From IMG/VR virus record IMGVR_UViG_3300013094_000017, positions 195,420-259,419 of that record: a stretch of DNA of 64,000 nucleotides. One strand, given 5' to 3'. The notes under the pieces were generated by a model. That model was not told the DNA's origin. It saw nothing but the letters and a program-made list of their open reading frames with translations, and searched no databases. Numbering within the stretch: the first letter of the stretch is position 1; every line of letters begins with the position of its first letter. This document shows, piece after piece, positions 30,959-48,864 of the stretch. The position numbers and the translations under genes were made by a program.

Positions 30959-30963
30959 TGCTC

Positions 30964-32416: not shown

Positions 32417-32478
32417 TTTGTTTCTCCGTTGTGTTAGTGTAAGTACATTATAACATCGGTATTACCACTTGTCAACCC

Positions 32479-32897: not shown

Positions 32898-32959
32898 TTT
32901 GTTTCTCCGTTGTGTTAGTGTAAGTGCATTATAGCAGGTAAAACCTGCTATGTCAACCC

Positions 32960-33160: not shown

Positions 33161-33215
33161 AATGTTTCTCCGTTGTGTTAGTGTAAAGCTATTATAGCAC
33201 CAATGGTAAAACCTG

Positions 33216-33437: not shown

Positions 33438-34018
33438 ATGTCTAAAGTACTTCCTAATCCTTTGTGATAGAACAAATGTTGTCCCACCTTGGTTATATAC
33501 TGCGTACGGTCTGCCCAAGCCGGCGATACATATGATGCATGATACATTAAAGCCTGCTGTAGGGGTCTTACACGTACCTTATCCACCAGCACGCTATGCG
33601 CAATCATTTGACTCTCAGCCCACAACACACCCTTGGGCTTGTCCAACTTCTTCTTAAGTGTCCACGAGAACTGTGCCTTTGCGTGGACTACCTTGCACAC
33701 ACTGTTACCCCAATGGCCCGTCTTGAGTCTGTTTAAGGTTACCTGTGCAACTGCGTATTTGCCCTGCACCGGCTCCACCCCAGCTTCGTAGTATACATTC
33801 TCTGCTAGACAAGTCAAGTCATTTTTTGTGTAATGGACATTCTCATCTGTCTGCACAAGAAAAGCCTTGATCTCACGGACCTCATTGTGGACCTCAGTGA
33901 TCTCACGTTGCTGGAACGACAGCAATGCTACCACTGCCGTTCCAGTTGCCGCTATGAGTAAATTACTCTTCGTCAACACTGTCTGCTTCCCACATCTCTT
34001 GGTTTTCGGAGATGGCAA
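33434..34018 (-). CDS. SleB-like cell wall hydrolase (Hydrolase_2)
   Basis: CLAENVYYEAG, AVAQVTLNR, QFSW, YHASYVSPAW, VGQHLFY; N-terminal anchor; start may be internal. Confidence 0.88.
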   Translation of the reverse strand: MPSPKTKRCGKQTVLTKSNLLIAATGTAVVALLSFQQREITEVHNEVREIKAFLVQTDENVHYTKNDLTCLAENVYYEAGVEPVQGKYAVAQVTLNRLKTGHWGNSVCKVVHAKAQFSWTLKKKLDKPKGVLWAESQMIAHSVLVDKVRVRPLQQALMYHASYVSPAWADRTQYITKVGQHLFYHKGLGSTLDI

Positions 34019-34535
34019 AAGTATCGTCTAACTCTTGCGGTAGTTGATCACGAGCGCCTTGTGCATCACCCCAGTCTTGGTAGTAGTCATCATTGCCGTC
34101 TTGATAGATGCCAGCGAACTGCATACCACCTTCATAGTAGTAGCCAAGCACATCAAAGCCCGCTTCTTCCAAGAACGCATAAGCGCCTACTGGCGGAGCC
34201 CAAGCACTGTCAAAGTGCAGGGTGATGCTGTGGAAGCCGTCAATGGTCTCATTGATCTCGTAGTATTCATCCTCACTGCCAACATCCCACTTGGTTCCCC
34301 AATTGCTCACGCACCAGTCATACCAAGTGCTGTAGCCATATTTCTCAAGGTTGGCTTCATATAGGGCCTGTAGTTCAGCATCATCAGTACCTGGAGCACT
34401 GGTGATCATCAAAGCCTCGGGCACAGGAGCGAACTCCTGTAGCAATACCCCACGCTTAAAGGCCTCTTCGACACGCTGGATCTGACCAGCATCTTTGTGA
34501 GTAAGTGTTACGATATTCTGGCACCAGTTTGGAAT
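33963..34535 (-). CDS. DUF1281/YubB-like phage protein, predicted ATT start
   Basis: ATT-CCA-AAC-TGG-TGC (PNWC) just after the cassette SD; WCVSNWGTKWD and FDSAWAPP motifs. Confidence 0.75.
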   Translation of the reverse strand: MPNWCQNIVTLTHKDAGQIQRVEEAFKRGVLLQEFAPVPEALMITSAPGTDDAELQALYEANLEKYGYSTWYDWCVSNWGTKWDVGSEDEYYEINETIDGFHSITLHFDSAWAPPVGAYAFLEEAGFDVLGYYYEGGMQFAGIYQDGNDDYYQDWGDAQGARDQLPQELDDTFAISENQEMWEADSVDEE

Positions 34536-34603
34536 TTTGGGTTCCTACCTTTCTTAATTTGTTAGTGTAAGTGCATTATAGCACCTTTCGGTGCTATGGT
34601 CAA

Positions 34604-34858
34604 CTAGCATTCGTAAAGTTTAACTCCAGGATCTAACTGCTTCAACTCATTCGCCGCCTGTGTTAGAAACTTAAAATTCCTACGAACAGTGGCCGCATCT
34701 AGCTCGCCATCACAGGTCAAGTTCTCTGGTGATAGTTTGCCATCGATGATATCTGCAATGTGTTGTCGGTCTTGGGCAGTGGCCAACGACAGAGGTTTAT
34801 TCCCCCATATGGCACGCCATTGGTTTTCTGCTTGGATAAAGGACTTTAGTGTTTTCAT
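34604..34858 (-). CDS. early hypothetical protein
   Basis: cassette upstream; LSPENLTCDGE. Confidence 0.7.
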   Translation of the reverse strand: MKTLKSFIQAENQWRAIWGNKPLSLATAQDRQHIADIIDGKLSPENLTCDGELDAATVRRNFKFLTQAANELKQLDPGVKLYEC

Positions 34859-34924
34859 TACGTTTCTCCGTGTTGTTAGTGTAAGTGCATTATAGCACCT
34901 ACACTAATCTCTGTCAACCTCTAT

Positions 34925-35197
34925 CTAGGCCATCTCTACCATGTTAGCAGGCACACGCCAAGCACCTTGTGGTGTATCGATAACGATGTTCTTAATAGCG
35001 ATCTTCTTAACGGTGCCTCGAATGGTTTGACGGCTACGGCTTGAAGTAAACTGGACAGCGTCACCTACACGGAATGTTCTTAGGTTCAATCGAGCGTTAC
35101 GGCTTCGGACATACTTGATTGACTCTACGATTGAGTTGATATCCGCATCAGTCAATTCTGAAGTTAGGATTAGTTCATTGATTTTGGCTACTGACAT
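34925..35197 (-). CDS. early SH3/KOW-like small protein
   Basis: FRVGDAVQF...GTVKKI...WRVPANMV. Confidence 0.6.
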   Translation of the reverse strand: MSVAKINELILTSELTDADINSIVESIKYVRSRNARLNLRTFRVGDAVQFTSSRSRQTIRGTVKKIAIKNIVIDTPQGAWRVPANMVEMA

Positions 35198-35250
35198 AGT
35201 CTGCTCCTTAAGTGTTTAAGTGTGTAGTATAACATCGGTATTACCAAATG

Positions 35251-35532
35251 TCAACCTAAAAAGAATTCAATCTCTTTAATAAGATCTTCCTTCACTGGCT
35301 TGTCTTCGTCGCCATGCACATACGCGGCGAACTCCTCTTCATGCCAGCGTTCAAATGTGCTAGTCATTAGCCAATTGAATATCTTTTCTGCTGACTCCTG
35401 CTTAACCTTAGCGCGGAACGCTTCCAATGCCTTAGCACTGTCGCCTTCTGTCCAGTAGGTAAGTCCGTCTTGCTCAACTAGCAGGCCTGCTTCGATTGCT
35501 AGTTGTTCTGTTGCGGAAAAGGTTGTGCTCAT
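35251..35532 (-). CDS. hypothetical protein
   Basis: ORF track. Confidence 0.5.
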   Translation of the reverse strand: MSTTFSATEQLAIEAGLLVEQDGLTYWTEGDSAKALEAFRAKVKQESAEKIFNWLMTSTFERWHEEEFAAYVHGDEDKPVKEDLIKEIEFFLG

Positions 35533-35656
35533 GCCATTACTCCTTGTTTAACCTTGCGCCAATCCCAACGTGCCTGTGTGTATGCACGACGGCTAAGTGT
35601 AAAGCCTGGGCAGTTCTTGCAGGCCCAAGCTACGAAGTGAACTTGCTCTACGTTAC

Positions 35657-35812
35657 TCATAAGCCACAAGCCTCGTAGAAGCGTCCATAGTCAAAGCGAC
35701 TGTTCATTGCCTTAGCAACATCTGCAAAAGCCTTAGCCGCTTGCTTGCGTGCATCCAAGTCTGCGATACCTGCTAGTTCTTTTGCCATTGCAATAAAGTG
35801 TTTACGTGACAT
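35657..35812 (-). CDS. 51-aa early protein (not in the ORF track)
   Basis: cassette-driven MSRKHFIAMAKELA...NSRFDYGRFYEACGL. Confidence 0.6.
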   Translation of the reverse strand: MSRKHFIAMAKELAGIADLDARKQAAKAFADVAKAMNSRFDYGRFYEACGL

Positions 35813-35865
35813 CTTGTGTTTCTCCGTTTTGTTAGTGTGTAGCTATTATAACACCGGTTTTACCT

Positions 35866-36111
35866 TTAGTCAACCTCAATTAACTTTAATTCGTAGAACA
35901 TATCCTGCGCCAAGTCTACGCTGACAAAGTCAATAGCATACTCTTCGCCACTCTCTTCACCTGTACCGTAGAAGCGACCTGTACTGAGATCCTCTCCCAG
36001 ATCTAATAAGTCCTGGTCAGTATCCCAATAGTCAATGCGGATGCCCTCGCAATTGAATGGAACATACACTGCGGCACGGCCTACGATCTCTTTAACCTTA
36101 TCTAAGCTCAT
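35866..36111 (-). CDS. hypothetical protein
   Basis: coupled second gene of a cassette. Confidence 0.55.
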   Translation of the reverse strand: MSLDKVKEIVGRAAVYVPFNCEGIRIDYWDTDQDLLDLGEDLSTGRFYGTGEESGEEYAIDFVSVDLAQDMFYELKLIEVD

Positions 36112-36494
36112 ACCTTCTCCTTTGCAACAATCTTAGGTTCACGTCCACTGCCATCGCTGATGTAGCCTAACACTAAGGTCTCCATAGCCCGCTTAGCCTC
36201 TTGCACGGCTTCCCAAGCAAGGTCTTCTGCGGTGCCGTCTTTGAATACTTCCATGGCATCCTCGTACAAGAAGCCACCTACATAAGCATCACCTAGCTCG
36301 ATGTCCTTGTAGTAGGCCACAGCGCGAAGCATGAACCAATCTAATTCATACGCATCAATCTTGCGACAAAGGTCTTCAACGTCTGTTACAGTGTCATCAA
36401 AGCAGTCTCTGGGGCTAATATCTTCCCAGGACTTTTCGATCTTAACAGTAAAGCCATCCATTTCAAGCTGGCCTAGTGTTTCCCAATGGCGCAT
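36108..36494 (-). CDS. early hypothetical protein
   Basis: cassette upstream. Confidence 0.65.
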   Translation of the reverse strand: MRHWETLGQLEMDGFTVKIEKSWEDISPRDCFDDTVTDVEDLCRKIDAYELDWFMLRAVAYYKDIELGDAYVGGFLYEDAMEVFKDGTAEDLAWEAVQEAKRAMETLVLGYISDGSGREPKIVAKEKV

Positions 36495-36548
36495 ATCATT
36501 CTCCGTTTGTTTAGTTTAAGTGCATTATAGCACAGGTATTACCAAAGG

Positions 36549-36710
36549 TCAATCCCAAAATTTATTAATAATCTCTTCTGCTTCCCTCATAGCACCATCA
36601 AAGTCACCAGCACCTAAGCAGAAGATCTCTCCGCTGTAGTGTAAGCACCAGCAGTTCAAGTGTAGATCAAATTCTACATCGTAACCAGTTTCTAATACAT
36701 GTACAGCCAT
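36549..36710 (-). CDS. small hypothetical protein
   Basis: GGAG SD before ATG 36710. Confidence 0.5.
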   Translation of the reverse strand: MAVHVLETGYDVEFDLHLNCWCLHYSGEIFCLGAGDFDGAMREAEEIINKFWD

Positions 36711-37028
36711 AATATTCTCCTTATAAACTTGCGGTATCAATTTCTACGTCCGCTAGGACAATAGTAACATCCCACGGCTTCTTAGCACCTAGTAGGCCTG
36801 CTGCGAGTCTTTGTGCGGCAAAGCTAGACTCTGCTTTCACTTCAATCTTCTTGCTCTTGTAGAACGCTATATACATATATGTTCGCATAGTGTACTCCTT
36901 GTTGTTAGTGTGTAAACATTATAGCGTAGGTTTTTCCATTTGTCAAGCATTATATTGGTAATATTTTGGTTGACAGGTATTACCAGCGATGCTATACTAC
37001 GTATACACTAACAACACGGAGAACTAAA

Positions 37029-37223
37029 ATGGGTACACCACTAATTGGAATGACGCTTGCAGATGCCTGCAGTATTGTTAAGGCCTATGCTGATCTACAA
37101 GGCTTACCGTTCTTAGAAGGTTTGATGGAAATGGATGCAGGCTATGATGACTTGGACCTTGAGGATCAAAGGGCCTGCAACATGGTATTGAAAGCTGGTC
37201 GAGAGATGTTTGCCCCAGTGTAG
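37029..37223 (+). CDS. early hypothetical protein on the divergent cassette
   Basis: plus-strand cassette 36970-37031. Confidence 0.65.
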   Translation: MGTPLIGMTLADACSIVKAYADLQGLPFLEGLMEMDAGYDDLDLEDQRACNMVLKAGREMFAPV

Positions 37224-37437
37224 TATAGTGGGAGTAGGTACGCAGGACACATCCTACTCCCCCGTCCTGCTTGTTTTGGGCTAACATAGGCCACTACCTA
37301 ACCACTGATCAGAACGTGGTCGCAGGTTAACACAGGCGCGGCATCACTATGTATAGCCTCATAGGGTTTCCTATAGGAGCAATCGATCAGCATCCTCCTA
37401 ACTCTCTCCCTCTTTATGCCTGACGTTCACGGTTTAC

Positions 37438-37514
37438 TGGTGCTCCGTCAGGGATTCGAACCCTGCCTCCCACGTTATGAGCATGGTACTCTCTACCTAG
37501 TGAGTTACCAGAGC
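37438..37514 (-). tRNA. tRNA with CAT anticodon (elongator Met or Ile2), CCA encoded
   Basis: cloverleaf GCTCTGG/ACGGAGC (G7-A66 mismatch), ACTC/GAGT D stem, CCATG-CTCATAA-CGTGG, CAGGG-TTCGAAT-CCCTG; lacks initiator features. Confidence 0.88.
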
Positions 37515-37566
37515 AAAAACTTATACATTAATAATACTATATCTATTCAGTTTTGTCAACTGTTAG

Positions 37567-38287
37567 TGGGCCTACCTTGACTCGAACTAAATACTATTAT
37601 GAAACTAGAACTTACTCCGCAGCGTATTGCAGCTAACAAAAAGAACTGCCTACTAGGAGGAGCAGCATTTGCCGCTAAAATGTCATCAGCATATAATGCT
37701 AATCCCAGCTATTGTAATCAATGCAGCACTATATTACCTCAGAGCAAGAAAAACAATAAATTCTGTAATTCCTCTTGTTCTGCAAAATATAGCAATGCAC
37801 GCAAGGACTATTCAAAGTTCACACCAGGACCTGTTCCTAAACCTAAAGATCCTACAGCGGGGTCAGCACCCTATAGTACATTATTCCGTTGTGAGTGTAA
37901 ACATTGCGGAGTAATTAAGCTGTATCGATCTCAAACCAAGTATTGTCCTGAACACAGGGATCTTTATAGCCACGCAGGCCGAGCTAAGTATTGGTTCACA
38001 TTTAACGTGTTTCATTACCCTGATCTGTTTGATCTAAACTGGGTTAACTCTGTGGGATTTCGAAGCTCTTCTAATCCCAATGGAGTTACTAGGGATCATA
38101 AAGTAAGTGTCAATGACGCCATTCGAAACAACTATGATCCCTATTACATAAAGCACGTACTCAACTGTGAGCTAATGCTATTCGCTGAAAATAATAAAAA
38201 GAAAACCAAGTCCTCTATCACCTATGCAGAGCTAGTCATACAAGTTAACCTGTATGATCAGTCTCTGACCAACTGAGCTACAGGCCC
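37567..38287 (-). pseudogene. tRNA gene (Ile-like acceptor) split by an HNH gene
   Basis: 5' piece 38287-38263 GGGCCTGTAGCTCAGTTGGTCAGAG; 3' piece 37587-37567 GTTCGAGTCAAGGTAGGCCCA; acceptor halves GGGCCTG/TAGGCCC pair. Confidence 0.8.
37599..38276 (+). CDS. HNH-type homing endonuclease with zinc-binding repeats
   Basis: CNQC...FCNSSC, CKHC, RDHKVS...HVLNCELM..ENNKK; TAAATA-N5-ATG. Confidence 0.75.
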   Translation: MKLELTPQRIAANKKNCLLGGAAFAAKMSSAYNANPSYCNQCSTILPQSKKNNKFCNSSCSAKYSNARKDYSKFTPGPVPKPKDPTAGSAPYSTLFRCECKHCGVIKLYRSQTKYCPEHRDLYSHAGRAKYWFTFNVFHYPDLFDLNWVNSVGFRSSSNPNGVTRDHKVSVNDAIRNNYDPYYIKHVLNCELMLFAENNKKKTKSSITYAELVIQVNLYDQSLTN

Positions 38288-38297
38288 TAAAACTACA

Positions 38298-38375
38298 GTG
38301 TGAGATCCCAAAGTATCCTTATGGGACGATTTATCTATCCGCTGCGCAGTACTATGTACATCGCCAATCTCACAC
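38298..38375 (-). ncRNA. candidate 78-nt structured late ncRNA upstream of the split tRNA
   Basis: TATAAATA (38381-38388, minus) then 5 nt to GTGTGAGA, which pairs with terminal TCTCACAC; internal CGAT/ATCG and TCCCA/TGGGA stems. Confidence 0.45.
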
Positions 38376-38427
38376 TTCTTTATTTATAACTCAAATGATG
38401 TTATACTACACTATATGACTTATAGTA

Positions 38428-38706
38428 TTACCTAGAATAAGTTAACTTGTTCAACAGTTCCTGCCCACAGACTCCCTCAGCAATGTCCATGAGTGCAGCC
38501 ACAGTAGGTTGATGAGCATGTACTTGAGTGGGATCATTTCGCCCAGAGATTAATCTAGCAGTCTGAATCTCACGAGCTCGAACACTGGCACCTAGAATCA
38601 AATAGAATGATTCATTGGCGAACCGCTCCATGGCAGGAGTATTATCATATACCTGCTGAACTTTTCTCACTATCTTCTTTGGTTTATATACTTTAACTTC
38701 ACTCAT
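38428..38706 (-). CDS. rpoZ: RNA polymerase omega subunit homologue
   Basis: ERFANESFYLILGASVRAREI and PTVAALMDIAEG match omega motifs (NRFDLVLVAARRARQ / TTVIALREIEEG). Confidence 0.8.
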   Translation of the reverse strand: MSEVKVYKPKKIVRKVQQVYDNTPAMERFANESFYLILGASVRAREIQTARLISGRNDPTQVHAHQPTVAALMDIAEGVCGQELLNKLTYSR

Positions 38707-38719
38707 ATCATTTCCTTAA

Positions 38720-39790
38720 GGTTATGCAGCGGGGTCACTACATATATAGTGTTATACTATAAGATACATTATACACTATATACACTAGTAAGTCAATGTA
38801 TACTGTATATAGTATAGAATATAAGCTATTAAGATATAGTGAGTATAGTATATAGTATAAGAGATCTATATATACTATACAGCGGGGTCACTACATATAC
38901 AGTAATATAGTATACAGTAATACAGTATACTGTATATACGGTGGGACCTATCGATATATAAGAGGGTATTAGGCAAGGTCAGAACCGCTAGGCCAAGGTC
39001 TAAATATGGTCAAGAATGGTGGCCAAATGGTGGATTCATGGGAGGTTTTTCTGTGAGATTATGGTAAAATCACTATAGAAACTGTGGGAAAATTGCTGCA
39101 AAATTTTTTGAAGGTGGGTGGGGAGAGAGGCTATGCTAGAATACTTCCCCAATGGTTCACCTATTTTCTCATACCTTGTTCACCTATTTTCTCATACCTT
39201 GTTCACCTATTTTCTCATACCCTGTTCTTACTATTCTCACAGTTCTCATGCAGCGGGGTCATACTGTATATAGTATATATAGTAATAAGTTCCCACTATA
39301 GCAAAAGCTCTTTAACTAGGTGTATAGTTCTAGCATACTCTCTTATACTGTATATAGTGTGTATACACTGCATGTATTAGATATACTGCATATAAGGTTA
39401 TATGTATTAGATATAGTGTATATAGTGTATAGTATTGACTTCTAGTAGTATATAGTGTATACTGACTGTATGTATAGATTATGAGTAGCAGAGTATATAT
39501 AGATACCAGCACTTATACATAGTCTATTAATATTGTCCTCACCCACTCAAGGATCTACTATGTTTGCCATATGGTCAGCTATTATACTATTATTGCTTAA
39601 TGGTTCTATACTCAGTGCAGTATTTGTTTTAACCATATACATGATCAAGTGCGGTTAATGAACCTATTAGATTTCGTATAGTTTAATTTATTCACTGTAT
39701 ATAAACTCATAGTTTAGTTATACGTATATATTTAAACTCTCAAGATCTTCCTCTAACTCCTAGAGTATCTAGTAAATATCCATTTGGATC
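38720..39790. other. TA-rich non-coding region with repeats; candidate origin or genome terminus
   Basis: dense TATA/TATAG/TATAC tracts; CAGCGGGGTCA at 38727, 38880, 39251; gene polarity switches here. Confidence 0.5.
39155..39223 (+). repeat. 23-bp tandem repeat x3
   Basis: GTTCACCTATTTTCTCATACCTT x2 plus a 1-nt variant, then a degenerate fourth unit. Confidence 0.92.
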
Positions 39791-39796
39791 CTGCCT

Positions 39797-40006
39797 ATGT
39801 TATTATTCTTTAGTTTATACATTATCTTTGGTCTAGCCCTGGCTGCTCTTGCACACTACCTACTGGATCAGGACCTGATCACTGAACAGCATATGGTTCT
39901 GCACTTTGGTCTAATTGTTCTAGTCAGTTTGATCTTTAGTCTTCCATTTATAGTCTATGTGTTGGTCAATGCGTTATGGAACTGCTTTAGTGAGTCTAAG
40001 CTCTAG
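39797..40006 (+). CDS. small membrane protein
   Basis: two TM helices. Confidence 0.5.
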   Translation: MLLFFSLYIIFGLALAALAHYLLDQDLITEQHMVLHFGLIVLVSLIFSLPFIVYVLVNALWNCFSESKL

Positions 40007-40225
40007 CCTCTTGACCCCGTGAGTCATTTAGTCTATACTATAAGTGACTTCACTTAAGGAAAATTCTCATGCGCCCATGTCCCCACTGCACCCGAAGGGT
40101 TGATGACTCAGCTAATCGGTGTCCCTACTGCACCAGTTGGATCACTCCCGTACCCAATACTGAGGTCAGGGATCTAATTGGTCTGGTCATAGTCATATGG
40201 CTCATATATAAGTTTTGGGGCTAAC

Positions 40226-40474
40226 ATGACTTGGCGTAGGGATCTTGATGTACTGCAAAAGAACTTCACCAATTGGATCTTCACCAATTGGATGCTGATA
40301 CCTCTTGTTAATAAGGCCAGTGGACTAGCTGATGTTAATCAAAGGATGCAGGCCCTGTACCCTGGTCCCTATAGTGTAATAGAAAAATTTGATCCCCGTC
40401 GAGGGTTGTTTGTTCTAGACCTAGAGTTTGCTAGCCCTCAAGCTCGTACTTTATGGCTACTCAAGTGGAGTTAA
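40226..40474 (+). CDS. [KR]W-tail family small protein
   Basis: ends LEFASPQARTLWLLKWS. Confidence 0.65.
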   Translation: MTWRRDLDVLQKNFTNWIFTNWMLIPLVNKASGLADVNQRMQALYPGPYSVIEKFDPRRGLFVLDLEFASPQARTLWLLKWS

Positions 40475-40475
40475 T

Positions 40476-40718
40476 ATGAAATACTTTTGGCCCGGACCCG
40501 GTGCAGATCCTGTACTCACCCACAGATTTAAAGTTAGCCTAGTCACTGATGAAATGTGGCTGTGGTGCGAACAATATGATAGTGGTCTGAGTGTAGACCG
40601 TGACTTTAGACGTTGGAATATTGAGTTTGGCCAGAACCGAGGCCGTGACCATGATGTCATACAGTTTGAATGGGAGCAGGCGGCAATTATGTTTGCTCTA
40701 AAGTTTGAGACCCTATAA
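40476..40718 (+). CDS. [KR]W-tail family small protein
   Basis: ends IQFEWEQAAIMFALKFETL; start 40476. Confidence 0.65.
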   Translation: MKYFWPGPGADPVLTHRFKVSLVTDEMWLWCEQYDSGLSVDRDFRRWNIEFGQNRGRDHDVIQFEWEQAAIMFALKFETL

Positions 40719-41104
40719 TGTGGGATAAGATTCAGGACTGGTATCTAACCTGGCGCACTGGCCGACCTCGCCAGGTACGTGAGTTTGAAGCATGGGCAGA
40801 AGTTACAATAGTCAAGCGTGCTAACACAGCCGAGGCTATGTTTAGGAACTTCAAGTATGTGTTTACAGTTGACTACAACAAGTTCTTTTTTGATGCTGGC
40901 ATGTTTATGGAGTTAGACCCAGGAACTAAACCATATATGTTTCCACAGCGTGAGTTAGGTGATAACTTAGTCTATGCTCACCTGCGTGGAGAGGAAATGC
41001 CAATTGGCCTGTTTCTTATAACTGACTTAGGTGATGAAGATAGACTTTATGTTGCCACAAACAACGGCAAGGATGCTACTATGATAGCACTATTATACGG
41101 TTGA
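40718..41104 (+). CDS. [KR]W-tail family-like protein
   Basis: ends YVATNNGKDATMIALLYG. Confidence 0.6.
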   Translation: MWDKIQDWYLTWRTGRPRQVREFEAWAEVTIVKRANTAEAMFRNFKYVFTVDYNKFFFDAGMFMELDPGTKPYMFPQRELGDNLVYAHLRGEEMPIGLFLITDLGDEDRLYVATNNGKDATMIALLYG

Positions 41105-41396
41105 CTTTTTTGGTAATACCGTGTATACTTAATTTTTGTTAATAGAAAGCTCTATATGAAAAAGATCTCTCGACTAAGTGATTTCCCTTATTCGATTCTT
41201 AAAACGAGAAAAGGACCTAACATGGTTCAGATTATGGCAAGGAAACTAACATGCGAGAAATATTTGCACTAACAGTATTGTTTATGGTGTTTATTGGAAT
41301 TCCATTGATCTTATACTGGCACTACATTACCCTAGCCTCTAAAGCAGAATCCGATATTGAACAGTTTACTCGTCAACTACGTGAAGAAAGAAACAA

Positions 41397-41582
41397 ATGA
41401 AAATCTACTTTGAAAAATTAAATTGGGCCCGTGCGATTGCAATCGCATTTACTATTTGGGGCAGTGTATGCAACTATCCAGAACGCGGCCTATGGGGCAT
41501 TGTTGATGCTGTAGTTCTTGTTTGGCTATTATACGCTTTAGGCTATTGGGCCGCGGAGACCGATCGTGCGTCACAAGATTAA
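41397..41582 (+). CDS. small membrane protein
   Basis: two hydrophobic segments. Confidence 0.5.
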   Translation: MKIYFEKLNWARAIAIAFTIWGSVCNYPERGLWGIVDAVVLVWLLYALGYWAAETDRASQD

Positions 41583-41719
41583 CACACCAACTGTGTACAC
41601 TTTACCTTCGGCGGGCGAAGCACATGCTTTCGTTAAAGGAGTTAACGTTGGATCAAAAAGTAAGGATAAAACTATAGTTGTTTACCCTTGGGGTCGAGAG
41701 GAAGTTGAGGTAATAGTAT

Positions 41720-41977
41720 ATGCGTCATAGAACTAAAACCTTACGCGAAGGCCGTTGGTACAAACTATTCAAAAGTACTAATCCTAAAACTGGTCGATCC
41801 AGCTATACCATACAGGTTGATGTGTATAATTTACGAGCGTGGGATAATGATGTGATACGCAAGCATTTTGACCCAGCAGGCAATCGTGGTAGTAAACACG
41901 GCACACGTTGGAAGTACGGTAATAAAGAAACGGCAGAAAAAGTATTGCTAATGGCAATGATAAAATTTGGAGAATAA
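41720..41977 (+). CDS. hypothetical protein with a family-like tail
   Basis: ends AEKVLLMAMIKFGE. Confidence 0.55.
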   Translation: MRHRTKTLREGRWYKLFKSTNPKTGRSSYTIQVDVYNLRAWDNDVIRKHFDPAGNRGSKHGTRWKYGNKETAEKVLLMAMIKFGE

Positions 41978-43855
41978 TATGGATTACAAAAGATTTCGAT
42001 TTTGGTTTATGCTGTCATTCTGTGTAAATTTTCTAATAGGATTCTCCCAACTGATCTTTGGCTACAATCATTACATTGATCACAAATGGTTACTGTTAAG
42101 AGTTAGTCTAATTCTTAGTACCTGTAATTTTGTCTGTGCCAAAGTAATGTACACTAGATATAAGCAGGTCATCCAAGATGAAAAGGATGAAGTGTGGAGA
42201 ATCTTATCAACTAACTATGAACATCAAATGGAGACCTTCTAATGGAAATGTTTTTTGGATTTGCCATGGGCCTGGGAACAGGGGTATGGGCAATGAATTA
42301 TCTTTGGGAAGAAAAAATCCGAGAGATTATTCGTACAGGCGAGTATACCAGTCTGGTCAACCCTCCAGTTGACAAACCCTAACATCTAGTATATACTATA
42401 CAATATGAATGTACAAAGATTAAGCGAATTAATTAATAACGCACATATTCTAGCTCGGGTATGCGTGGCCAACCCTCGATTGACCAAAGATGAACAGGAT
42501 ATATGTGAGAGTAATCTACGCACCTTAATTGCAGGGCTGTATGCAGAACTAAACGAATCAGCCCCGAATCATGAACGGCTACCGGACTCTATAAAGAGTG
42601 ATTACTAATATGCATGAACTATCTCCTTGGATTGCTAGCCTACTTGCTGCCGTGGTAGCAGTGAATATATTTGCTTTGGTATTCCTTATCATATATGGGC
42701 TAGCACACCTATGGGAACGTAAATACAAGGAAGAGGATCAATGAGATATAAGAAAATCTACATAGCGGTTATGGCCGCACTTCACGGGCATAAGCGTGAT
42801 CCACTTGCGTCCTCACACTGGTACTAATATCATGCTAGATCCTATTCGTCAACAAGTATTAACTATTGCTAATAATAACTCGATGATGTATGTTCACGAA
42901 ACATATCTTGTTCGTTACACCCGTGATATTGTATTAGCCACTATTGCAGATTTAGAGCTCAACGGCTATGACGATGCAGCCAATCAACTCAGAGTTACAT
43001 GGAAAGGACTCCTAGATGACCCCCAATAAACTTCATGCATTAAAGGGTATTGCTTTTCTTTTGGTAGTAGTAATATCAGTACTGATCCTAGTATGTCACC
43101 TAGGAGTAACACCTAGACTGTCAGATGATCAGCGGGCTAAGAATGCCGCAGAAGATCTGGGCTGTGAGTACCTGGGTCGCACCCATGATGTACCTCGTGT
43201 GGGCTTTATGGACTGCGGTGACGGTGACATTCAAATGATGAGGGTATACTAATGAAACCTGTAATTAAACAAATGTGGCAGGATGCATTTGATTATGCAT
43301 TTGATGTCAGTGAACGAGGTCCTAACCTCAGCATGGCCCATATGAATGAAGTGGCATTAGAAAAGTTTGCTGAACTGGTTGTTCGAGATTGTGCTGATCA
43401 TATACTCAACTGTACTGATAGATATCGTAAAGAGTATTTTGCACACTTAATTTTAGACCAATATGGGATTAAAGAATAATGGAATGTGTATATAGTTTAG
43501 GGCCTTTTTGTTGGCATACTGCTCTCAAGTTTTATATTTGGTTGGCTGGTATTATAATGATTTGGACCATGGTGGGTGTTAACTGGTATGTGAGTTACAA
43601 AAATAATCAACGCATTAAAGAACTACGTGCTCGTATTAGAGCTCGTGAAGGAAAGGATAGCATATGAATCGTAGCGCATGGTGGTTGTATTGGGTATCGA
43701 TGATTTATCTAACAGTGGGTATGTTTGATATATTCATCTACAGGTTTTGTCGTACAGGGTATATCCAAGCAGTATGGGTAGTGGTATTAAGTTTGCCATT
43801 ATGGATTAGACCATTGGCACGCAAGTTAAACATGAAATGTGTCTGGGAGGCATGA
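41967..43855 (+). other. run of coupled small hypothetical and membrane genes (41967, 42405, 42796, 43016, 43252, 43479, 43664)
   Basis: ORF track; start/stop overlaps; TTGACA promoter at about 42370. Confidence 0.55.
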
Positions 43856-44245
43856 TGAGTCATTTTAGAGATTGGTATCAAGAAAACGATGTAGAGATTA
43901 CTTGGGCCTTAATTGGTTCTTTAACTGCATTTGGTATTACAGAACTAGGTCAAGGTGATTACCTGTGGGCTACTTTTGATTTTGCCTTTGCCTGTATTAA
44001 TTTTATGTTTAGAAAGGCATAATATGGCTTATGTTGACGTTGAAGTAGAAGTAGAGTTAGATATGTTCAGTGATAAGGAACTTATCGAAGAATGTAAATT
44101 ACGTGGAATGTCTGTTGATGGGGGTGTAGAACATTACTCTGCTCATGATGTCATCCGTGACATCTATAATGCCAAGGCCCGTGGACAAGACTACGAGCCT
44201 TTGTTACGTGATCTATTCTATCGCACACTTGGACGGGTATGCTAA
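43837..44245 (+). other. two small hypothetical genes (about 43855-44022 and 44024-44245)
   Basis: ORF track with likely internal starts MSHF and MAYVD. Confidence 0.5.
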
Positions 44246-45846
44246 CTGATATAGAAATTAATCAAGGGTACAAGCCCTTAAAGCTCTCAAAGCTGGCCTC
44301 TGGGCTAGGCATTGGGGGTAGCGTACAAGAGTGGGGGCCAAATAAGGCCAAGATAGCATTTGATGAAGTTAAGAGCCTTACCCAGGGTAAATTGATCTTA
44401 GTCACAGCCATCACCCCCACCCCCGCAGGTGAGGGTAAGACCACAACCACCATAGGCCTAGCTGATGGGCTACGCAAATTAAACTACTCAAGCATAGTAT
44501 GCCTACGTGAGCCAGCCCTGGGCCCGGTGTTTGGTATGAAGGGTGGGGCTACCGGGGGTGGTCATGCCCAGGTCTACCCTATGGAGGATATCAACTTACA
44601 CTTTACAGGTGACTTCCACGCAGTTGCCTGCGCACACAACTTACTCAGCAGTATGATTGATAATCACTTACATTGGGGCAATGCGCTACGGTTAGACACT
44701 AGCAAGATCACATGGCGCAGAGTCAGCGAAATGAATGACCGTAGCTTACGCAGTACAGTAGTAGGGTTAGGAGCTCATAACAGCATCACCCGTGAAGAGG
44801 GCTTTGATATAGTAGTAGCCTCTGAGGTAATGGCTATATTGTGTCTAGCTGAAGATTTCAAAGACCTAAAGAAACGTCTGGGTAAGATCACAGTTGGGTA
44901 TACCTTAGATGGTAAGCCCGTTACAGCTAAACAGTTAAAGGCGCATGGGGCTATGGCAGCCTTACTTAAAGATGCTGTCAACCCTAACCTAGTACAGACT
45001 TTAGAAGGTACCCCAGCACTAGTTCATGGCGGCCCATTTGCTAACATAGCACACGGATGTAATAGTGTTATTGCTACCAAGTTAGGTTTGAAACTTGCTG
45101 ACTATGTGGTAACAGAAGCAGGCTTTGGTGCTGACCTAGGTGCTGAGAAGTTTATTAATATTAAGTGTCGTAAGAGTGGATTACGGCCAGATGCAGTAGT
45201 CCTTGTGGCCACTGTTAGAGCAATTAAGTACTGGGGTAATTATGATAATTTGGACAAACATATGGCTAACATCAAAGGTTGGTATAACTTACCTTGTATC
45301 GTGGCTATTAATCGTTTTGCAGACGATTCTGATGAAGATATTGCTGAACTAATAGAACATTGTCGAGAAAGAGATGTTGAAGCAGTAGAGTGTACACATT
45401 TTGCAGATGGCGGGGTAGGTGCTCAAGAACTAGCACACGAAGTTGTCTTGGCCATTGACCAATCAAGCAAGCAGATGGAATTGACCTATGCTGATGAAGA
45501 TACATTATGGACTAAGATAAATCATATTGCCAAGAGAATATACGGTGCCGAAGGTGTTCATATGGATGCTAAAGTATCAGCACAGTTAGATCTACTACAG
45601 AAACATTATGGAAAGTATCCAATCTGTATTGCCAAAACACAGAGCAGTTTCAGTGATGATCCTACAGATAAGAACTCAGCAACAGACATACACACACTAA
45701 CTGTGCGTGAGCTACGCCTGTGTACCGGAGCAGAGTTTATTGTGGCAGTATGCGGTAACATCATGACCATGCCAGGACTACCAGAACGGCCAAACGCTGA
45801 ACGTATTGGTATTGACCGACAAGGGCGTATTGAGGGATTAGACTAA
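44239..45846 (+). CDS. fhs: formate--tetrahydrofolate ligase (auxiliary metabolic gene)
   Basis: TPTPAGEGKTTT, GGATGGG, INLHFTGDFHA, HGGPFANIAHG, VTEAGFGADLGAEKF, CIAKTQ, MTMPGL. Confidence 0.97.
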   Translation: MLTDIEINQGYKPLKLSKLASGLGIGGSVQEWGPNKAKIAFDEVKSLTQGKLILVTAITPTPAGEGKTTTTIGLADGLRKLNYSSIVCLREPALGPVFGMKGGATGGGHAQVYPMEDINLHFTGDFHAVACAHNLLSSMIDNHLHWGNALRLDTSKITWRRVSEMNDRSLRSTVVGLGAHNSITREEGFDIVVASEVMAILCLAEDFKDLKKRLGKITVGYTLDGKPVTAKQLKAHGAMAALLKDAVNPNLVQTLEGTPALVHGGPFANIAHGCNSVIATKLGLKLADYVVTEAGFGADLGAEKFINIKCRKSGLRPDAVVLVATVRAIKYWGNYDNLDKHMANIKGWYNLPCIVAINRFADDSDEDIAELIEHCRERDVEAVECTHFADGGVGAQELAHEVVLAIDQSSKQMELTYADEDTLWTKINHIAKRIYGAEGVHMDAKVSAQLDLLQKHYGKYPICIAKTQSSFSDDPTDKNSATDIHTLTVRELRLCTGAEFIVAVCGNIMTMPGLPERPNAERIGIDRQGRIEGLD

Positions 45847-48800
45847 TGGCAGTTGTTTGGGAAAATAGAGAAAAGAGTAGATTCTTAGTATCAGGACCTT
45901 TCGATGAAAGTATGCCTAATCTATATGTTATTATTGCTGATTTTGGTTGGTATATCGAGCATACTGACGAAATAGAATATTGGATGGATCAGCATTTGCC
46001 TCAAGGAAGACATCATCGAGAGGGGATGGTTATATCGTTTGATAATCCCAAAGACTGTTCGCATTTCTTATTAAGGTGGATGGTTTGAGTCATTCTGCCT
46101 ATAGAGAAATTACAAAACCTTATTGGGATCATCATGACGATGTATATGCCGATGAAGTAGAAAATGGTTGGGAGCCAAAGTTTACATCTTGGTATCAACA
46201 CACTATTGTAAACGACATTGCCCGTGGTGGATTTGATTGGCATTTTGATACCTACGAACAGATTGCCAAATGGATTCCTGAGAACGTGGAAGATTGGGCT
46301 AACAATGCACAATGGCTCAAGGTCAGTGATTGCATCTATGTTAGATTTAAGCGTGAAAAAGATTATGTTTGGTTTATGTTGAAGTGGGGCTAATATGCCA
46401 AGAAACGGCGAATACGAATTGTTTACCTATAAAGGTACAATTGTCTGCATGGATGACCCGGATATCCCGAGAATAGAATTCTCTGAAGAAATTGCCGAGT
46501 GGATACGTGAGCAAGACCATTTAATGTGGCGTTCATTATCACCGCCCAATCAAGATATATTCTACCTAAAACCTAAACTATATATGATGTGGAAGTTAAA
46601 GTGGGTATGAATGGTTTCCAACAATCAGTACAATCAATAAAGGAAAATTTTGCTTGGTCTACAATCTGTAGCAGCCGAGACTTTAGACATCAAGCTCAAT
46701 GGGTTATTGATAATCTAGGCCCGCAAGGTATTAGATGGGAATATTCTCAAACAAAATACTACTTAAAAACAGAACAAGACAAATTATTATTTCTATTGAG
46801 GTGGAGTTAATGCTAATACCTGTTGAAACTGTACATAAGGCTGTTAGGGATCTCGAATCTCACGGGGATATAACCCAAACTATGTTTGAAGATCGTTATC
46901 GCTGTAGTCTTTGTCCCAGCGATAGTCTAGAGCATTATGATGTTATTTTTGATACACCTCAAGCTGCTATTATGTTTATAATGAAATGGTCATGAGATGA
47001 AAACAATTTGGTTAAAGAGTCCTATTGCAGAACTATGGTGGAAGTTCTGGCCTGGGAAGATCATTGACCTACCGATGCCAGATGGCTTTATGTCTGAAAT
47101 TGTATGGGGTGTTGTAACAGTAGGAACAAATATGTCTGAGCAGTATTACAATATGCTGGTCTGGATGGAAGAACATGTAGGAGTAAAAGGACGTGATTGG
47201 AATTGGCAAATTCATACAACTACTGAATTATTACACTATAAATCTGAAACTAGATTAGCTATTAAACTTCGACGTGGTAAAGAAAAACAAGCAAGTATAA
47301 TAGCATTAAAATTCTCATGATATTAAATCGTACACAATTTGCCATACACTTTAACAATCTGCAACCTGGACTAGGTAATCGCAGTAGTGCCTTATGGAGT
47401 CCCGAAGAATATCTTAGAGTAAACAAATCTGTGGCATTTGTTTGTGTTAAACCTATTAACGTATCGGCGATAGGAAAAATAGTATATTGGAACTGGTGCA
47501 AGAAACACTTACAAGGAAAAGTAGCCTGCTACAGCAGCGATGATATTAACGAAGAAGAATGGTGGGGATTTACTAATCCCGATGATATTGTATTTTGGAT
47601 GCTAAGATGGGCGAACTAATAAACTCAAATACATTCGCTGATAATACAGAGAACTCTAAAGACAGAGAAGATTGGTTACTTAGACGTAACAGATACTGGA
47701 TGAGATTGCGTGCAGTCCATCGTGAGTTTAATGCTCTTAAAGGTGGGAATTACTCAGCAGGTGACGAACTTTTTGTCAAATACCTGCAAGATACCTACGG
47801 AGTTCAAATGCATGTTGAAAACACCCATATTACTGCCCTCTACAATGTAGTAGACAAATCAAAATATCTGTTATTCTTAATGAAATTTGATGTATGAGTT
47901 TTGGCGGCTTTTCGTTACCGTTTATAGGCACTAAAGAGGAATATCAAGAGCTAATGGCCAAACAAGAAATAGCAAAACGTACACTCAATCTGTATAAGAA
48001 TCTATTATGGCGGTATCGTCTTAGGACTGAGATCTCTATCAAGTGGCCCATTGGGTGGACACCACAGGATCATTTGGGCAATAGTGCTGAAAGCTCAGAC
48101 CCTAATGTTTGGTACCGTGATTGGTTTGAACAGCATGCTGGTCGTCAAGGATGGGCATGGGATTGGCGTATTGGTCAAACGCATACTTACGAACTTGATC
48201 CATTAGTTGAGGTGCATGATACATTACGCATTAAGTTTCGTGACCCAAAAATAGCAACCTTGTTTATATTAACTTGGGTAAGATAAATGGCAAAAAGTAG
48301 TTTTGAAGAGAGTCTTGAGGATATGATAATTCAGGAATGGTCTGAAAGTTGGGATCATGCCGTCTTAGATGAGCTATGGGGAAATACACCTAAGACCTAC
48401 AGCATAAAAAAATCTTGGCGTGATCGCAGAGGCAGACAGATGCATCGCATTTCGGTCAGCGGTCGTGTGCTGGAATGGTTAGAAACTACACAGTCACAAT
48501 ACGGTAAATCAAATCCAGAATGGTGGAAGTTCCAAAATGAGATCAACATCACAGATAAGATGTTAAGTATGTTGATACTAAGATGGGGTAAGGAATGATG
48601 TATAAAGTAACAAAATTAGATGGTAGATTTGCTGGATCAGATCGATACAAGTATTACATCAGCCCTAAGGGAAGAACTCCGTTTAATATAGTTAAACCTT
48701 TGTTCAACGATTGGCGCACATGGTGTTGGGCCACATGGGGACCAGCTAGCGAACGTGATTGGTATGCAAATGTTGACTGGGCATGGGATACTGAACACAA

Positions 48801-48864
48801 TCATCTACGCATCTATCTGCGCAGTGATAAACAATTATCTATGTTCCACCTCAAGTGGGGTTAA
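45846..48864 (+). other. tandem run of eleven [KR]W-tail family genes (45846, 46076, 46395, 46589, 46810, 46997, 47317, 47595, 47894, 48287, 48595)
   Basis: ends: FLLRWMV, FMLKWG, WKLKWV, FLLRWS, FIMKWS, IALKFS, WMLRWAN, FLMKFDV, FILTWVR, LILRWGKE, FHLKWG. Confidence 0.75.

What the first reader, a model, noticed from the sequence alone, without database searches (positions are those of the whole stretch)
40226..48864. Expanded family of about 15 small proteins sharing only a C-terminal F-x-L-[KR]-W helix
Seen: ORFs of 60-130 aa with dissimilar N-termini (several with W-x-x-x-[HN]-x-G-x-x-G-x-x-W) end in strand + [FY]-x4-8-[FW]-x-[LM]-[KR]-[WF]-[SG]. Eleven are consecutive (45846-48864) and three or four more lie at 40226-41977. 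Inference: a diversified paralogue array with a constant docking tail and variable heads, as expected for adaptors, receptor-blocking or anti-defence proteins that plug into one common partner. I know of no described function.
Basis: partly seen in the sequence, partly recalled or inferred. Interest (0 to 1): 0.74.

Follow-up and report, generated by a model that had tools for sequence, protein, structure and literature searches.

The report
Unnamed small-protein family in jumbo phage
A freshwater jumbo phage carries 13 tightly packed genes for small proteins of one large, unnamed, virus-specific family of unknown function, and the last few codons of most of these genes also serve as the ribosome-binding site of the next gene.

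Summary
Eleven consecutive + strand genes (45846-48864) and two more (40226, 40476) end in h-x-[LM]-[KRT]-[WF]. The motif is enriched over other ORFs of the genome (Fisher p 2e-18). ORFs 40718 and 41720 are not supported as members.

The proteins share more than a tail. They share a domain of about 50 residues (W-helix, G-x-x-G loop, W-strand, F-x-F strand, E-x-D-A-x-x-F-x-L-R-W helix). Two independent AlphaFold models give it a beta-alpha-beta-beta-alpha fold. The tail helix is part of the hydrophobic core, not a free docking peptide.

A profile finds 2,705 clusters of small, almost all viral, unannotated proteins. Cultured phages carry it too: PA5oct 3, Atu_ph07 5, Sinorhizobium phage Phosso 38. 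There is no Pfam, PHROG, NCBIfam or PDB match.

The paralogues are ancient. Each has its own orthologue (40-70% identity) in related phages, and recent duplicates are under purifying selection.

In related arrays L-R-W-[SA]-stop is written TTG AGG TGG NCA TGA, which is a Shine-Dalgarno site plus the overlapping start of the next gene (AGG 30 of 34 Arg codons against 4% background).

Function is unknown. My best guess is a co-translated set of pre-late host-modulating binders. The common-partner idea is not supported.

The parts
45846..46088 (+). Family member 1, 80 aa, tail F-L-L-R-W-M-V. Its ATG overlaps the FTHFS stop by one base.
   Evidence: External HMM E 7e-9. Orthologues in L004, L003 and L006 at 43-46% identity. 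Junction geometry.
46085..46393 (+). Family member 2, about 102 aa from a TTG start (the longest ORF starts at GTG 46076), tail F-M-L-K-W-G.
   Evidence: External HMM E 3.9e-9. The start overlaps the previous stop (TTGA), with AAGGTGG 4-5 nt upstream. The Atlas record starts at this residue.
46395..46610 (+). Family member 3, 71 aa, tail W-K-L-K-W-V.
   Evidence: External HMM E 1.2e-4. Iterated HMM E 5e-7.
46607..46810 (+). Family member 4, 67 aa (the longest ORF starts at 46589), tail F-L-L-R-W-S. This is the protein modelled.
   Evidence: External HMM E 3e-13. AlphaFold2 pLDDT 80.6, fold b-a-b-b-a. Its tail TTGAGGTGGAGTTAA supplies the Shine-Dalgarno site for the next gene.
46810..46995 (+). 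Family member 5, 61 aa (the longest ORF starts at 46735), tail F-I-M-K-W-S.
   Evidence: External HMM E 4e-5. Orthologue L006 11112-11309 at 43% identity. The start overlaps the previous stop by 1 nt.
46997..47320 (+). Family member 6, 107 aa, tail I-A-L-K-F-S. Carries W-x3-H-x-G-x2-G-x2-W.
   Evidence: External HMM E 2.8e-5. Still found with the tail removed, E 2.6e-5.
47317..47619 (+). Family member 7, 100 aa, tail W-M-L-R-W-A-N.
   Evidence: External HMM E 2.8e-7. Orthologue L004 10369-10665 at 51% identity.
47607..47897 (+). Probable divergent member 8, about 96 aa (the longest ORF starts at 47595), tail F-L-M-K-F-D-V.
   Evidence: HMM not significant (E 2.8; 0.17). It has the tail, lies inside the array, and has orthologues inside the arrays of L013, L004, L002 and L003.
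47894..48286 (+). Family member 9, 130 aa, tail F-I-L-T-W-V-R. A long N-terminal helix precedes the domain.
   Evidence: External HMM E 4e-6. 33 orthologues at 48-67% identity. AlphaFold2 with orthologues only gives pLDDT 75 and the same b-a-b-b-a topology.
48287..48598 (+). Probable divergent member 10, 103 aa, tail L-I-L-R-W-G-K-E.
   Evidence: HMM weak (E 0.19). Orthologues at 46-48% identity lie in the arrays of L002, L003 and L006.
48595..48864 (+). Family member 11, 89 aa, tail F-H-L-K-W-G. Last gene of the run.
   Evidence: External HMM E 4.9e-8.
40226..40474 (+). Probable member, 82 aa, tail W-L-L-K-W-S.
   Evidence: External HMM E 0.019. Iterated HMM E 4e-4. The tail junction resembles that at 46787-46811 (family D3).
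40476..40718 (+). Family member, about 80 aa (the longest ORF starts at 40428), tail F-A-L-K-F-E-T-L.
   Evidence: External HMM E 5e-8. Orthologues L003 14032-14280 (70% identity) and L006 6405-6635 (42%).
40718..41104 (+). Conserved neighbour, 128 aa, ending D-A-T-M-I-A-L-L-Y-G. Not a demonstrable member.
   Evidence: HMM E 9.6. An 83% identical orthologue follows the 40476 orthologue in L003.
41720..41977 (+). Small ORF, 85 aa, ending M-A-M-I-K-F-G-E. Not a member.
   Evidence: No HMM hit. Orthologue L004 13753-14061 at 48% identity. No Pfam family.
44239..45846 (+). Formate-tetrahydrofolate ligase gene directly upstream of the run. It abuts the first member by a 1-nt overlap.
   Evidence: Pfam PF01268, E 1e-227.
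39435..42397 (+). Four + strand host-type promoter-like sites TTGAC-N18-TATACT (39435, 40011, 41101, 42369), upstream of the block of small genes that ends with the array. None lies inside 45846-48864.
   Evidence: Nine exact matches in the window against 0.08 expected. Promoter scan.

Best explanation
SHOWN.
- The 13 genes encode members of one large, virus-specific, so far unnamed family of small soluble proteins.
- The family is defined by a domain of about 50 residues: helix with W(C), G-x-x-G loop, strand with W, strand F-x-F, then helix E-x-D-A-x-x-F-x-L-[RK]-W.
- AlphaFold predicts a beta-alpha-beta-beta-alpha two-layer sandwich, a ferredoxin/RRM-like topology without the last strand.
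- The 'tail' is the second helix of that domain. Its conserved residues are hydrophobic, so I read it as part of the core.
- The paralogues are old and individually conserved. Each has its own orthologue in related jumbo phages, including its own N-terminal extension, and evolves under purifying selection.
- The genes are packed start-on-stop. The codons of the terminal [RK]-W-x also form the Shine-Dalgarno site of the next gene. This partly explains why the proteins end so uniformly.

INFERRED.
- The run is transcribed with the small-gene block and FTHFS from host-type TTGAC-N18-TATACT promoters, before late genes, and is translated as one coupled unit.
- Each paralogue uses its own surface (N-terminal extension, helix 1 to strand 2 loop, strand 2-3 hairpin) on the common scaffold to bind a different host or phage macromolecule.
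- The array would then be a co-produced set of host-modulating or counter-defence binders, not a set of adaptors for one partner.
For: Family and its extent:
- The external HMM finds 10 window ORFs.
- The profile search finds 2,705 50%-identity clusters at E<=1e-3, nearly all 50-110 aa with the domain at the C-terminus.
- Structure matches are only uncharacterised, mostly viral proteins. One ESM Atlas cluster has 4,872 members, 97% viral.
- Cultured phages carry it: PA5oct 3, Atu_ph07 5, Phosso 38, all annotated hypothetical where I looked: the three PA5oct genes and the first 12 kb of Phosso.

Fold:
- Two models from independent alignments give the same topology.
- Conserved columns are hydrophobic and spread over the domain.
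- Homology survives removal of the tail.

Age and selection:
- Paralogues are mutually undetectable by pairwise search.
- Each has orthologues at 40-70% identity.
- Head is more conserved than tail within orthologues.
- dN/dS is 0.13-0.32 for the two recent duplicate pairs in L002 and one L002-L003 pair.

Coupling:
- Start-stop overlaps of -4, -1, 0 or +1 nt.
- AGG is 30 of 34 Arg codons at the tail against 4% background, p 8e-38.
- AGGTGG occurs in 31 of 66 members with a coupled downstream start and in 0 of 6 without. The two uncoupled R-W tails use CGC.
- In the window, 5 of 12 junctions pair with the anti-Shine-Dalgarno sequence at -6 kcal/mol or better, against 4% of background windows.

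Timing and location:
- Promoter motif 9 copies observed, 0.08 expected, none inside the run.
- PA5oct depends on host RNA polymerase and has TTGAC/TATAATA promoters (PMC7318152).
- The three PA5oct members lack the virion mass-spectrometry note that neighbouring structural genes carry.

Accessory character:
- Copy number ranges from 3 to 38.
- Arrays differ between the near relatives L002 and L003.
Against: - No partner, ligand or phenotype is known for any member.
- There is no similarity to any characterised anti-defence, takeover or regulatory protein.
- Low dN/dS in recent duplicates does not look like an arms race.
- The three PA5oct members lie among nucleotide-metabolism genes, outside the gp34-gp105 set that the paper calls early. 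'Pre-late' is therefore an inference from promoters only.
- No RNA run could be listed for this phage.
- Strict co-translation of many paralogues would also fit a hetero-oligomer.
- Burial of the tail helix is read from the secondary structure, the confidence values and the residue types.
Confidence: 0.45

Rival explanations
1. The C-terminal helix is a constant docking element that plugs all paralogues into one common partner, and the variable heads recruit or block different things (adaptor logic, as in F-box or PRANC proteins).
For: The tail is the strongest shared signal. The helix is hydrophobic on more than one face (positions 59 and 61-64), which could mean a second packing partner. Coupled translation gives equal amounts of all paralogues.
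Against: - The tail is predicted as an integral helix of the domain, with high confidence, in two independent models.
- Conservation is spread over the domain and survives tail removal.
- Orthologues conserve heads more than tails.
- The last residues vary freely in Phosso.
- Their constancy elsewhere is tied to the ribosome-binding site of the next gene.
Confidence: 0.1
2. The domain is a small RRM-like or ferredoxin-like nucleic-acid binder. The paralogues would be RNA- or DNA-binding regulators with different sequence preferences.
For: - The best solved-structure matches of both models are the RRM-like N-terminal domain of family B DNA polymerases, RRMs, KH and ACT domains.
- Position 52 lies between the two hydrophobic positions 51 and 53 of strand 3, so it should point the other way. 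It is usually Tyr, less often His, Lys or Arg, and it is followed by K/R.
- A large subfamily has a basic G-P-G-G-R-N-K-K-Y-R-W-R loop.
Against: - Z scores of 4-6 are below the level the tool itself calls meaningful.
- Foldseek finds nothing in the PDB.
- Predicted pI of the window members runs from 4.9 to 9.7 and half are acidic.
- There is no sequence match to any RNA-binding family.
Confidence: 0.15
3. The paralogues are subunits of one hetero-oligomeric assembly. They are made in fixed proportion by translational coupling and joined through exposed sheet edges.
For: There is an unbroken chain of start-on-stop junctions with internal Shine-Dalgarno sites. The three-stranded sheet lacks the fourth strand of the ferredoxin-like fold.
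Against: - Copy number and content differ strongly between phages (3 to 38) and even between close relatives. This is unlike a fixed complex.
- The one complex job run here, a homodimer of member 4, gave no verdict.
Confidence: 0.1
4. The shared tail is only a nucleotide-level junction signal (ribosome-binding site plus start) and the ORFs are otherwise unrelated.
For: Extreme codon bias at the tail, and its dependence on a coupled downstream start. Junction repeats are the only DNA repeats in the window's array.
Against: - The conserved W, G, W, F and F positions lie 15-35 residues upstream of the junction.
- The tail-less HMM still finds members.
- Two alignments give one fold.
- F-x-L is kept in Phosso without the R-W codons.
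Confidence: 0.03

Closest known systems
Hypothetical proteins gp209, gp210 and gp237 of Pseudomonas phage PA5oct, plus 38 hypothetical-protein loci of Sinorhizobium phage Phosso and 5 of Agrobacterium phage Atu_ph07
   Same: They are matched by the family profile. They are small, carry the W-C-x-E-N helix and the D-A-x-x-F-x-L helix, and lie in runs of small same-strand genes near nucleotide-metabolism genes.
   Different: They are uncharacterised themselves. The last two tail residues are not R-W in most. PA5oct has only three scattered copies.
Lineage-specific expansions of small domains in jumbo phages, for example the roughly 35-copy zinc ribbon of Bacillus phage G (Iyer et al. 2021, PMC7824862)
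   Same: Tens of copies of one small domain in a giant phage genome, function inferred only.
   Different: A different fold with no metal ligands. This family is not mentioned in the passages of that survey that my term search returned (Atu_ph07, PA5oct, paralog, expansion).
Ferredoxin-like / RRM-like alpha-beta sandwiches (RRM, ACT, the N-terminal domain of family B DNA polymerases)
   Same: Order b-a-b-b-a and two helices packed on one face of an antiparallel sheet. These are the best solved-structure matches.
   Different: The fourth strand is missing. Z is only 4-6. There is no sequence relationship and no RNP motifs.
Pfam PF18406 (recalled from memory as the ferredoxin-like domain of Api92-like proteins, DUF1281_C). 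Homologues of window ORF 33963-34445 on the minus strand carry it.
   Same: A W-C-x-x-N-W-G helix motif resembles W-C-x-E-N-F-G. That ORF gave weak hits to the family HMM (E 0.02-0.03).
   Different: Profile-profile comparison gives probability 0.8% over 12 columns. The families are not related at any level I could detect.
Translationally coupled operons with ATGA overlaps and a Shine-Dalgarno site inside the upstream gene (established knowledge of bacterial and phage operons)
   Same: The stop of one gene overlaps the start of the next, and GAGGTG lies 4-6 nt upstream.
   Different: Here the site coincides with the same conserved amino-acid motif in dozens of successive paralogues, so one 15-nt cassette closes a protein domain and opens the next gene.

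Membership tests
The unnamed W(C)...G-x-x-G...W...F-x-F...E-x-D-A-x-x-F-x-L-[RK]-W domain family (defined here by alignment A2) | Significant match to a profile built without the candidate's own genome | tested here: met
   Ten window ORFs at E 3e-13 to 1.2e-4. 40226 is marginal at 0.019. 47595 and 48287 are weak. 40718 and 41720 fail.
The unnamed W(C)...F-x-L-[RK]-W domain family | Predicted b-a-b-b-a domain ending at the C-terminus | tested here: met
   Model of 46607-46807 with the family alignment (pLDDT 80.6). Model of 47894-48283 with orthologues only (pLDDT 75.4). Only two members were modelled.
The unnamed W(C)...F-x-L-[RK]-W domain family | Similarity that extends beyond the C-terminal helix | tested here: met
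   With the tail-less HMM against tail-trimmed ORFs, three members score E 2e-5 to 2e-3 and four more rank in the top ten of 1,892. Not significant for every member.
   The tail is predicted as a core helix of the domain. Tails are less conserved than heads among orthologues. The partner itself could not be tested.
RRM / ferredoxin-like nucleic-acid-binding domains | b-a-b-b-a-b fold with a clear structural match and RNP-type exposed aromatic residues | tested here: inconclusive
   The topology matches except for the last strand. Best Z is 5.4-6.1, under the tool's noise bar. Foldseek finds nothing at E<=0.001. A frequent Tyr sits at position 52 between the hydrophobic positions 51 and 53.
Pfam PF18406 (recalled from memory as Api92-like ferredoxin-like domain) | Profile-level homology | tested here: not met
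   hhalign probability 0.8%. No Pfam hit for 64 members and 10 canonical hits.
T4-type hyperplastic-region cassettes flanked by early-promoter stem-loops (recalled from the literature on T4-type phages, not re-read here) | A promoter and stem-loop between successive small ORFs | tested here: not met
   There is no intergenic space and no promoter motif inside 45846-48864. The junctions are ribosome-binding-site and start overlaps instead.
Known anti-defence or host-takeover protein families | Sequence or fold match to a characterised member | tested here: not met
   No match in PHROGs, Pfam, NCBIfam, PDB sequences, PDB folds or BFVD. The PADLOC library was not searched because it holds defence proteins, not counter-defence proteins.

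The most novel reading that the evidence does not exclude
The family is a phage-borne library of binders on one minimal scaffold. Its genes are joined by a fixed 15-nt dual-use junction (end of the conserved helix + Shine-Dalgarno site + overlapping stop and start). That junction enforces co-translation and also serves as a short homology joint, through which cassettes are duplicated, lost and exchanged between phages. It would then be a modular gene-cassette system for host manipulation or counter-defence.
Probability: 0.15. Interest if true: 0.75.

Novelty: new member of a known kind. Interest (0 to 1): 0.5.

Why it matters
If the reading holds, one of the larger still-unnamed protein families of tailed phages becomes defined. 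It has thousands of sequence clusters and up to 38 copies in one cultured phage. This report supplies a fold, a boundary and a diagnostic motif for it.

The family occurs in cultivable systems (Sinorhizobium phage Phosso, Pseudomonas phage PA5oct, Agrobacterium phage Atu_ph07), so its function can be tested directly.

The junction finding is a caution for motif hunters. Part of what looks like a conserved protein terminus is a ribosome-binding site for the next gene. It is also a clean natural case of an amino-acid motif and a translation signal sharing the same bases across dozens of genes.

Tried and rejected
- Pfam, PHROGs and NCBIfam scans of window members, of 64 array members, of ten canonical database hits and of the PA5oct members: nothing.
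- PDB sequence profile search: only chance hits, E>0.1.
- Foldseek against the PDB for both models: nothing at E<=0.001.
- tblastn of two canonical members against 50,697 phage records: no match. The query is too short for that test; the profile search of chosen genomes did find members.
- Profile search of T4, S-PM2, P-SSM2 and Erwinia phage Hallingskeid: no match. My recollection that marine T4-like cyanophages carry this motif was not borne out.
- Relationship to PF18406 through the W-C-x-x-N-W-G motif: rejected by hhalign.
- Homodimer prediction for member 4: no verdict, score 0.12 against a mark of 0.42. This is no evidence either way.
- Protein-language-model neighbours: only unnamed viral clusters, scores under 0.9.
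- Domain fusions as a functional lead. Five database hits have two matched stretches (four more have two that I did not examine). None of the five has a Pfam family. One 460-aa helicase sits in the same 90%-identity cluster as a 55-aa member; I did not check whether it contains the domain. Atlas fold rows with DnaJ and SRAP proteins could not be followed because no sequences were returned.
- Literature searches for a description of the family. The PA5oct omics paper does not mention gp209, gp210 or gp237 in its text. The passages of the jumbo-phage survey returned by my term search do not describe the family. No supplement is held for the PA5oct paper.
- RNA evidence: no RNA run could be listed.
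- dN/dS between the window and its orthologues was not attempted, because at 40-70% protein identity synonymous sites are saturated. It was computed only for the two recent duplicate pairs in L002 and one closely related L002-L003 pair.

Full report
**Setting.**
- The window is the last 64 kb of a 259,419-bp virus record, estimated 73% complete.
- It encodes a large terminase, a gp32-like single-strand-binding protein, a UvsX-like recombinase, a DnaB-like helicase and a DNA ligase.
- It also encodes a formate-tetrahydrofolate ligase, FTHFS.
- The nearest cultured phages by terminase are Pseudomonas phage PA5oct (55% identity), Sinorhizobium phage Phosso (49%) and Agrobacterium phage Atu_ph07 (48%). 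So this is a T4-related jumbo phage.
- The DNA is found in lake and freshwater metagenomes of several years. Short contigs from independent runs cover the array and its gene junctions with few or no differences.

**The observation.**
- Eleven consecutive + strand ORFs from 45846 to 48864 end in a hydrophobic-x-[LM]-[KRT]-[WF] motif within four residues of the stop. So do ORFs at 40226 and 40428.
- Among ORFs of at least 60 aa, 10 of 11 array ORFs match a strict form of the motif, against 3 of 580 others (Fisher p 2.4e-18). Two of those three are the upstream members.
- Pairwise searches between the paralogues find nothing significant.

**It is a domain, not only a tail.**
- Related jumbo-phage contigs were fetched through orthologues of the 130-aa member. 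They carry even longer runs of such genes, with a clearer consensus: a helix with W, a G-x-x-G loop, a strand with W, a strand F-x-F, then E-x-D-A-x-x-F-x-L-R-W.
- An HMM built without any window sequence recognises ten window ORFs at E 3e-13 to 1.2e-4 among all 1,892 ORFs of the genome. In that search 40226 is marginal, 47595 and 48287 are weak, and 40718 and 41720 are not recognised. An iterated search gives the same picture.
- When the whole C-terminal helix is cut from the model and from the targets, three members are still significant and four more rank in the top ten.

**Fold.**
- AlphaFold2 on the 67-aa member (46607-46807) with a 150-row family alignment gives pLDDT 80.6 and the order strand, helix, strand, strand, helix.
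- The 130-aa member (47894-48283), folded with its 32 orthologues only, gives a long N-terminal helix followed by the same order of elements (pLDDT 75.4).
- The nearly invariant columns are W32, W44, F53, F62, L64 and W66. Their residue types and spacing are those of a hydrophobic core.
- Solved structures give only generic matches (Z up to 6.1) to RRM-like, KH and ACT domains and the N-terminal domain of family B polymerases. Foldseek finds nothing in the PDB.
- Predicted-structure libraries return only uncharacterised proteins, nearly all viral. One ESM Atlas cluster has 4,872 members.

**Extent of the family.**
- The profile finds 2,705 representatives of 50%-identity clusters at E<=0.001. 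Most are 50-110 aa with the domain at the C-terminus, and a few have two copies.
- None of the members tested has a Pfam, PHROG or NCBIfam family. Where a source names a protein, it says 'hypothetical protein'.
- The profile matches 3 loci in PA5oct (gp209, gp210, gp237), 5 in Atu_ph07 and 38 in Phosso. It matches none in T4, S-PM2, P-SSM2 or Erwinia phage Hallingskeid.
- A freshwater contig with cyanophage-type genes (heme oxygenase, bilin reductase) carries seven members in a row.
- In several of these genomes the run lies beside a metallophosphoesterase gene and nucleotide-metabolism genes.

**Evolution.**
- Most window paralogues have their own full-length orthologue in related phages at about 40-70% identity. 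Paralogues within the genome are not alignable pairwise.
- In the orthologous group of the 130-aa member, the N-terminal helix, strand 1 and helix 1 are 70-83% identical pairwise. The tail helix is 53-62% identical.
- A related phage (L002) has recent tandem duplicates at 87-88% nucleotide identity. These duplicates and one closely related L002-L003 pair give dN/dS of 0.13-0.32.
- The window itself has no recent duplicates.
- The array is therefore old, each copy is kept for its own sake, and gene content still turns over between relatives.

**A second constraint on the tail.**
- The genes abut start-on-stop, with overlaps of -4, -1, 0 or +1 nt.
- In the related arrays L-R-W-[SA]-stop is written almost invariably TTG AGG TGG (G/T)CA TGA. 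The rare codon AGG supplies 30 of 34 arginines at that position, against 4% of arginine codons in long ORFs of the same loci (p 8e-38).
- GAGGTG is a Shine-Dalgarno sequence, and the ATG of the next gene overlaps the TGA.
- AGGTGG occurs in 31 of 66 members that have a coupled downstream start and in none of 6 that do not. The two uncoupled R-W tails use CGC.
- In the window the junctions are less canonical (more Lys than Arg). All four arginines are AGR. Five of twelve junctions pair with the anti-Shine-Dalgarno sequence at -6 kcal/mol or better, against 4% of background windows.
- In Phosso the helix keeps D-A-M-x-F-K-L while the last two residues vary.

**Expression context.**
- A promoter-like motif TTGAC-N18-TATACT occurs nine times in the window against 0.08 expected. 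Four copies are on the minus strand between 25 and 35 kb. Five are on the plus strand between 37.0 and 42.4 kb.
- This marks two divergent blocks of small genes. No copy lies inside 45846-48864, which has no intergenic space.
- By inference, the array is transcribed with FTHFS from upstream host-type promoters.
- PA5oct depends on host RNA polymerase and has TTGAC/TATAATA promoters (PMC7318152).
- The PA5oct members lack the virion mass-spectrometry note carried by neighbouring structural genes.
- No RNA run could be listed for this phage.

**Interpretation.**
- Shown: a real, ancient, virus-specific small-domain family in a translationally coupled array, with a tail that is both a core helix and a ribosome-binding site.
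- Inferred (about 0.4): a co-produced set of pre-late proteins, each binding a different macromolecule through its own surface.
- An RRM-like nucleic-acid-binding role (about 0.15) and a hetero-oligomer (about 0.1) remain open.
- A homodimer prediction gave no verdict.
- The idea of a link to PF18406 through a shared W-C-x-x-N-x-G motif was tested and rejected.

**Novelty.**
- The family is not in the curated libraries searched, and I found no description of it in the papers searched.
- Expansions of small domains in jumbo phages are a known kind of thing (PMC7824862), and the fold class is common.
- I therefore file it as a new member of a known kind, of moderate interest. Members exist in cultivable phages, which makes it testable.

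Noticed in passing
window 25063-42397 (nine sites: 25063, 25443, 29323, 35226 on the minus strand; 36970, 39435, 40011, 41101, 42369 on the plus strand): An exact promoter-like motif TTGAC-N18-TATACT occurs nine times against 0.08 expected. It is arranged divergently around 36-37 kb and marks two outward-facing blocks of small genes.
   Followed up: partly
L002, L003, L004, L006, L013, L015 (array gene junctions); window junctions 46071-46088, 46796-46812, 48578-48598: The 15-nt junction TTGAGGTGG(G/T)CATGA recurs at gene boundaries. It encodes L-R-W-[SA]-stop, a Shine-Dalgarno site and the next ATG at once. AGG is used only where a downstream gene is coupled.
   Followed up: yes
window 38892-38938 and 39155-39227: Short tandem repeats (15-nt and 7-nt units; a 23-nt unit in 3.2 copies at 98% match) lie in the AT-rich zone (GC 0.36) upstream of the rightward block. 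The overlapping ORFs listed there with repeated peptide strings are probably not genes.
   Followed up: no
window 44239-45846: A full-length formate-tetrahydrofolate ligase gene sits in a phage, directly joined to the array. At the DNA level it matches FTHFS regions in gut phage contigs and Lak megaphages at 64-74% identity. Some contigs laid on it from other runs are probably other organisms' FTHFS.
   Followed up: partly
window 33963-34445, minus strand (overlapping ORF 33434-34018 in another frame, not examined): This ORF has 861 homologues of about 190 aa, and a few carry Pfam PF18406. It has a W-Y-D-W-C-V-x-N-W-G-T-K-W motif that superficially resembles helix 1 of the array family, but it is unrelated by profile comparison.
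   Followed up: yes
L002 10376-12094 compared with L003 10376-11690: Two closely related phage contigs from one study differ in array content. L002 carries two recent gene duplications (87-88% nucleotide identity).
   Followed up: partly
protein P0190 (database cluster of P0048): A 460-aa protein with ResIII/DEAD helicase domains is clustered at 90% identity with 55-aa family members. I did not check whether it contains the domain. If it does, it is either a true fusion or a gene-calling artefact.
   Followed up: no
window 40069-40224: A 51-aa ORF with two C-x-x-C pairs followed by a hydrophobic stretch, ending I-Y-K-F-W-G, lies just upstream of the first upstream member. By eye it is a zinc-ribbon membrane protein. 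It is not part of the family by HMM.
   Followed up: no
window 58189-63120 and 2310-3893: Large ORFs of 1,643 and 527 aa have no PHROG family, and the larger has no Pfam family either.
   Followed up: no
genome G000:C1 79769-80050, 8085-8360, 6266-6595, 14480-14734 (outside the window): Four further small ORFs give weak hits to the family profile (E 0.005-0.06). The one at 14480 ends Y-N-L-K-W-A-K. They are possible scattered, divergent members.
   Followed up: partly
window 37438-37514, minus strand: A single tRNA-Met (CAT) gene lies near the point where the two blocks of small genes diverge.
   Followed up: no
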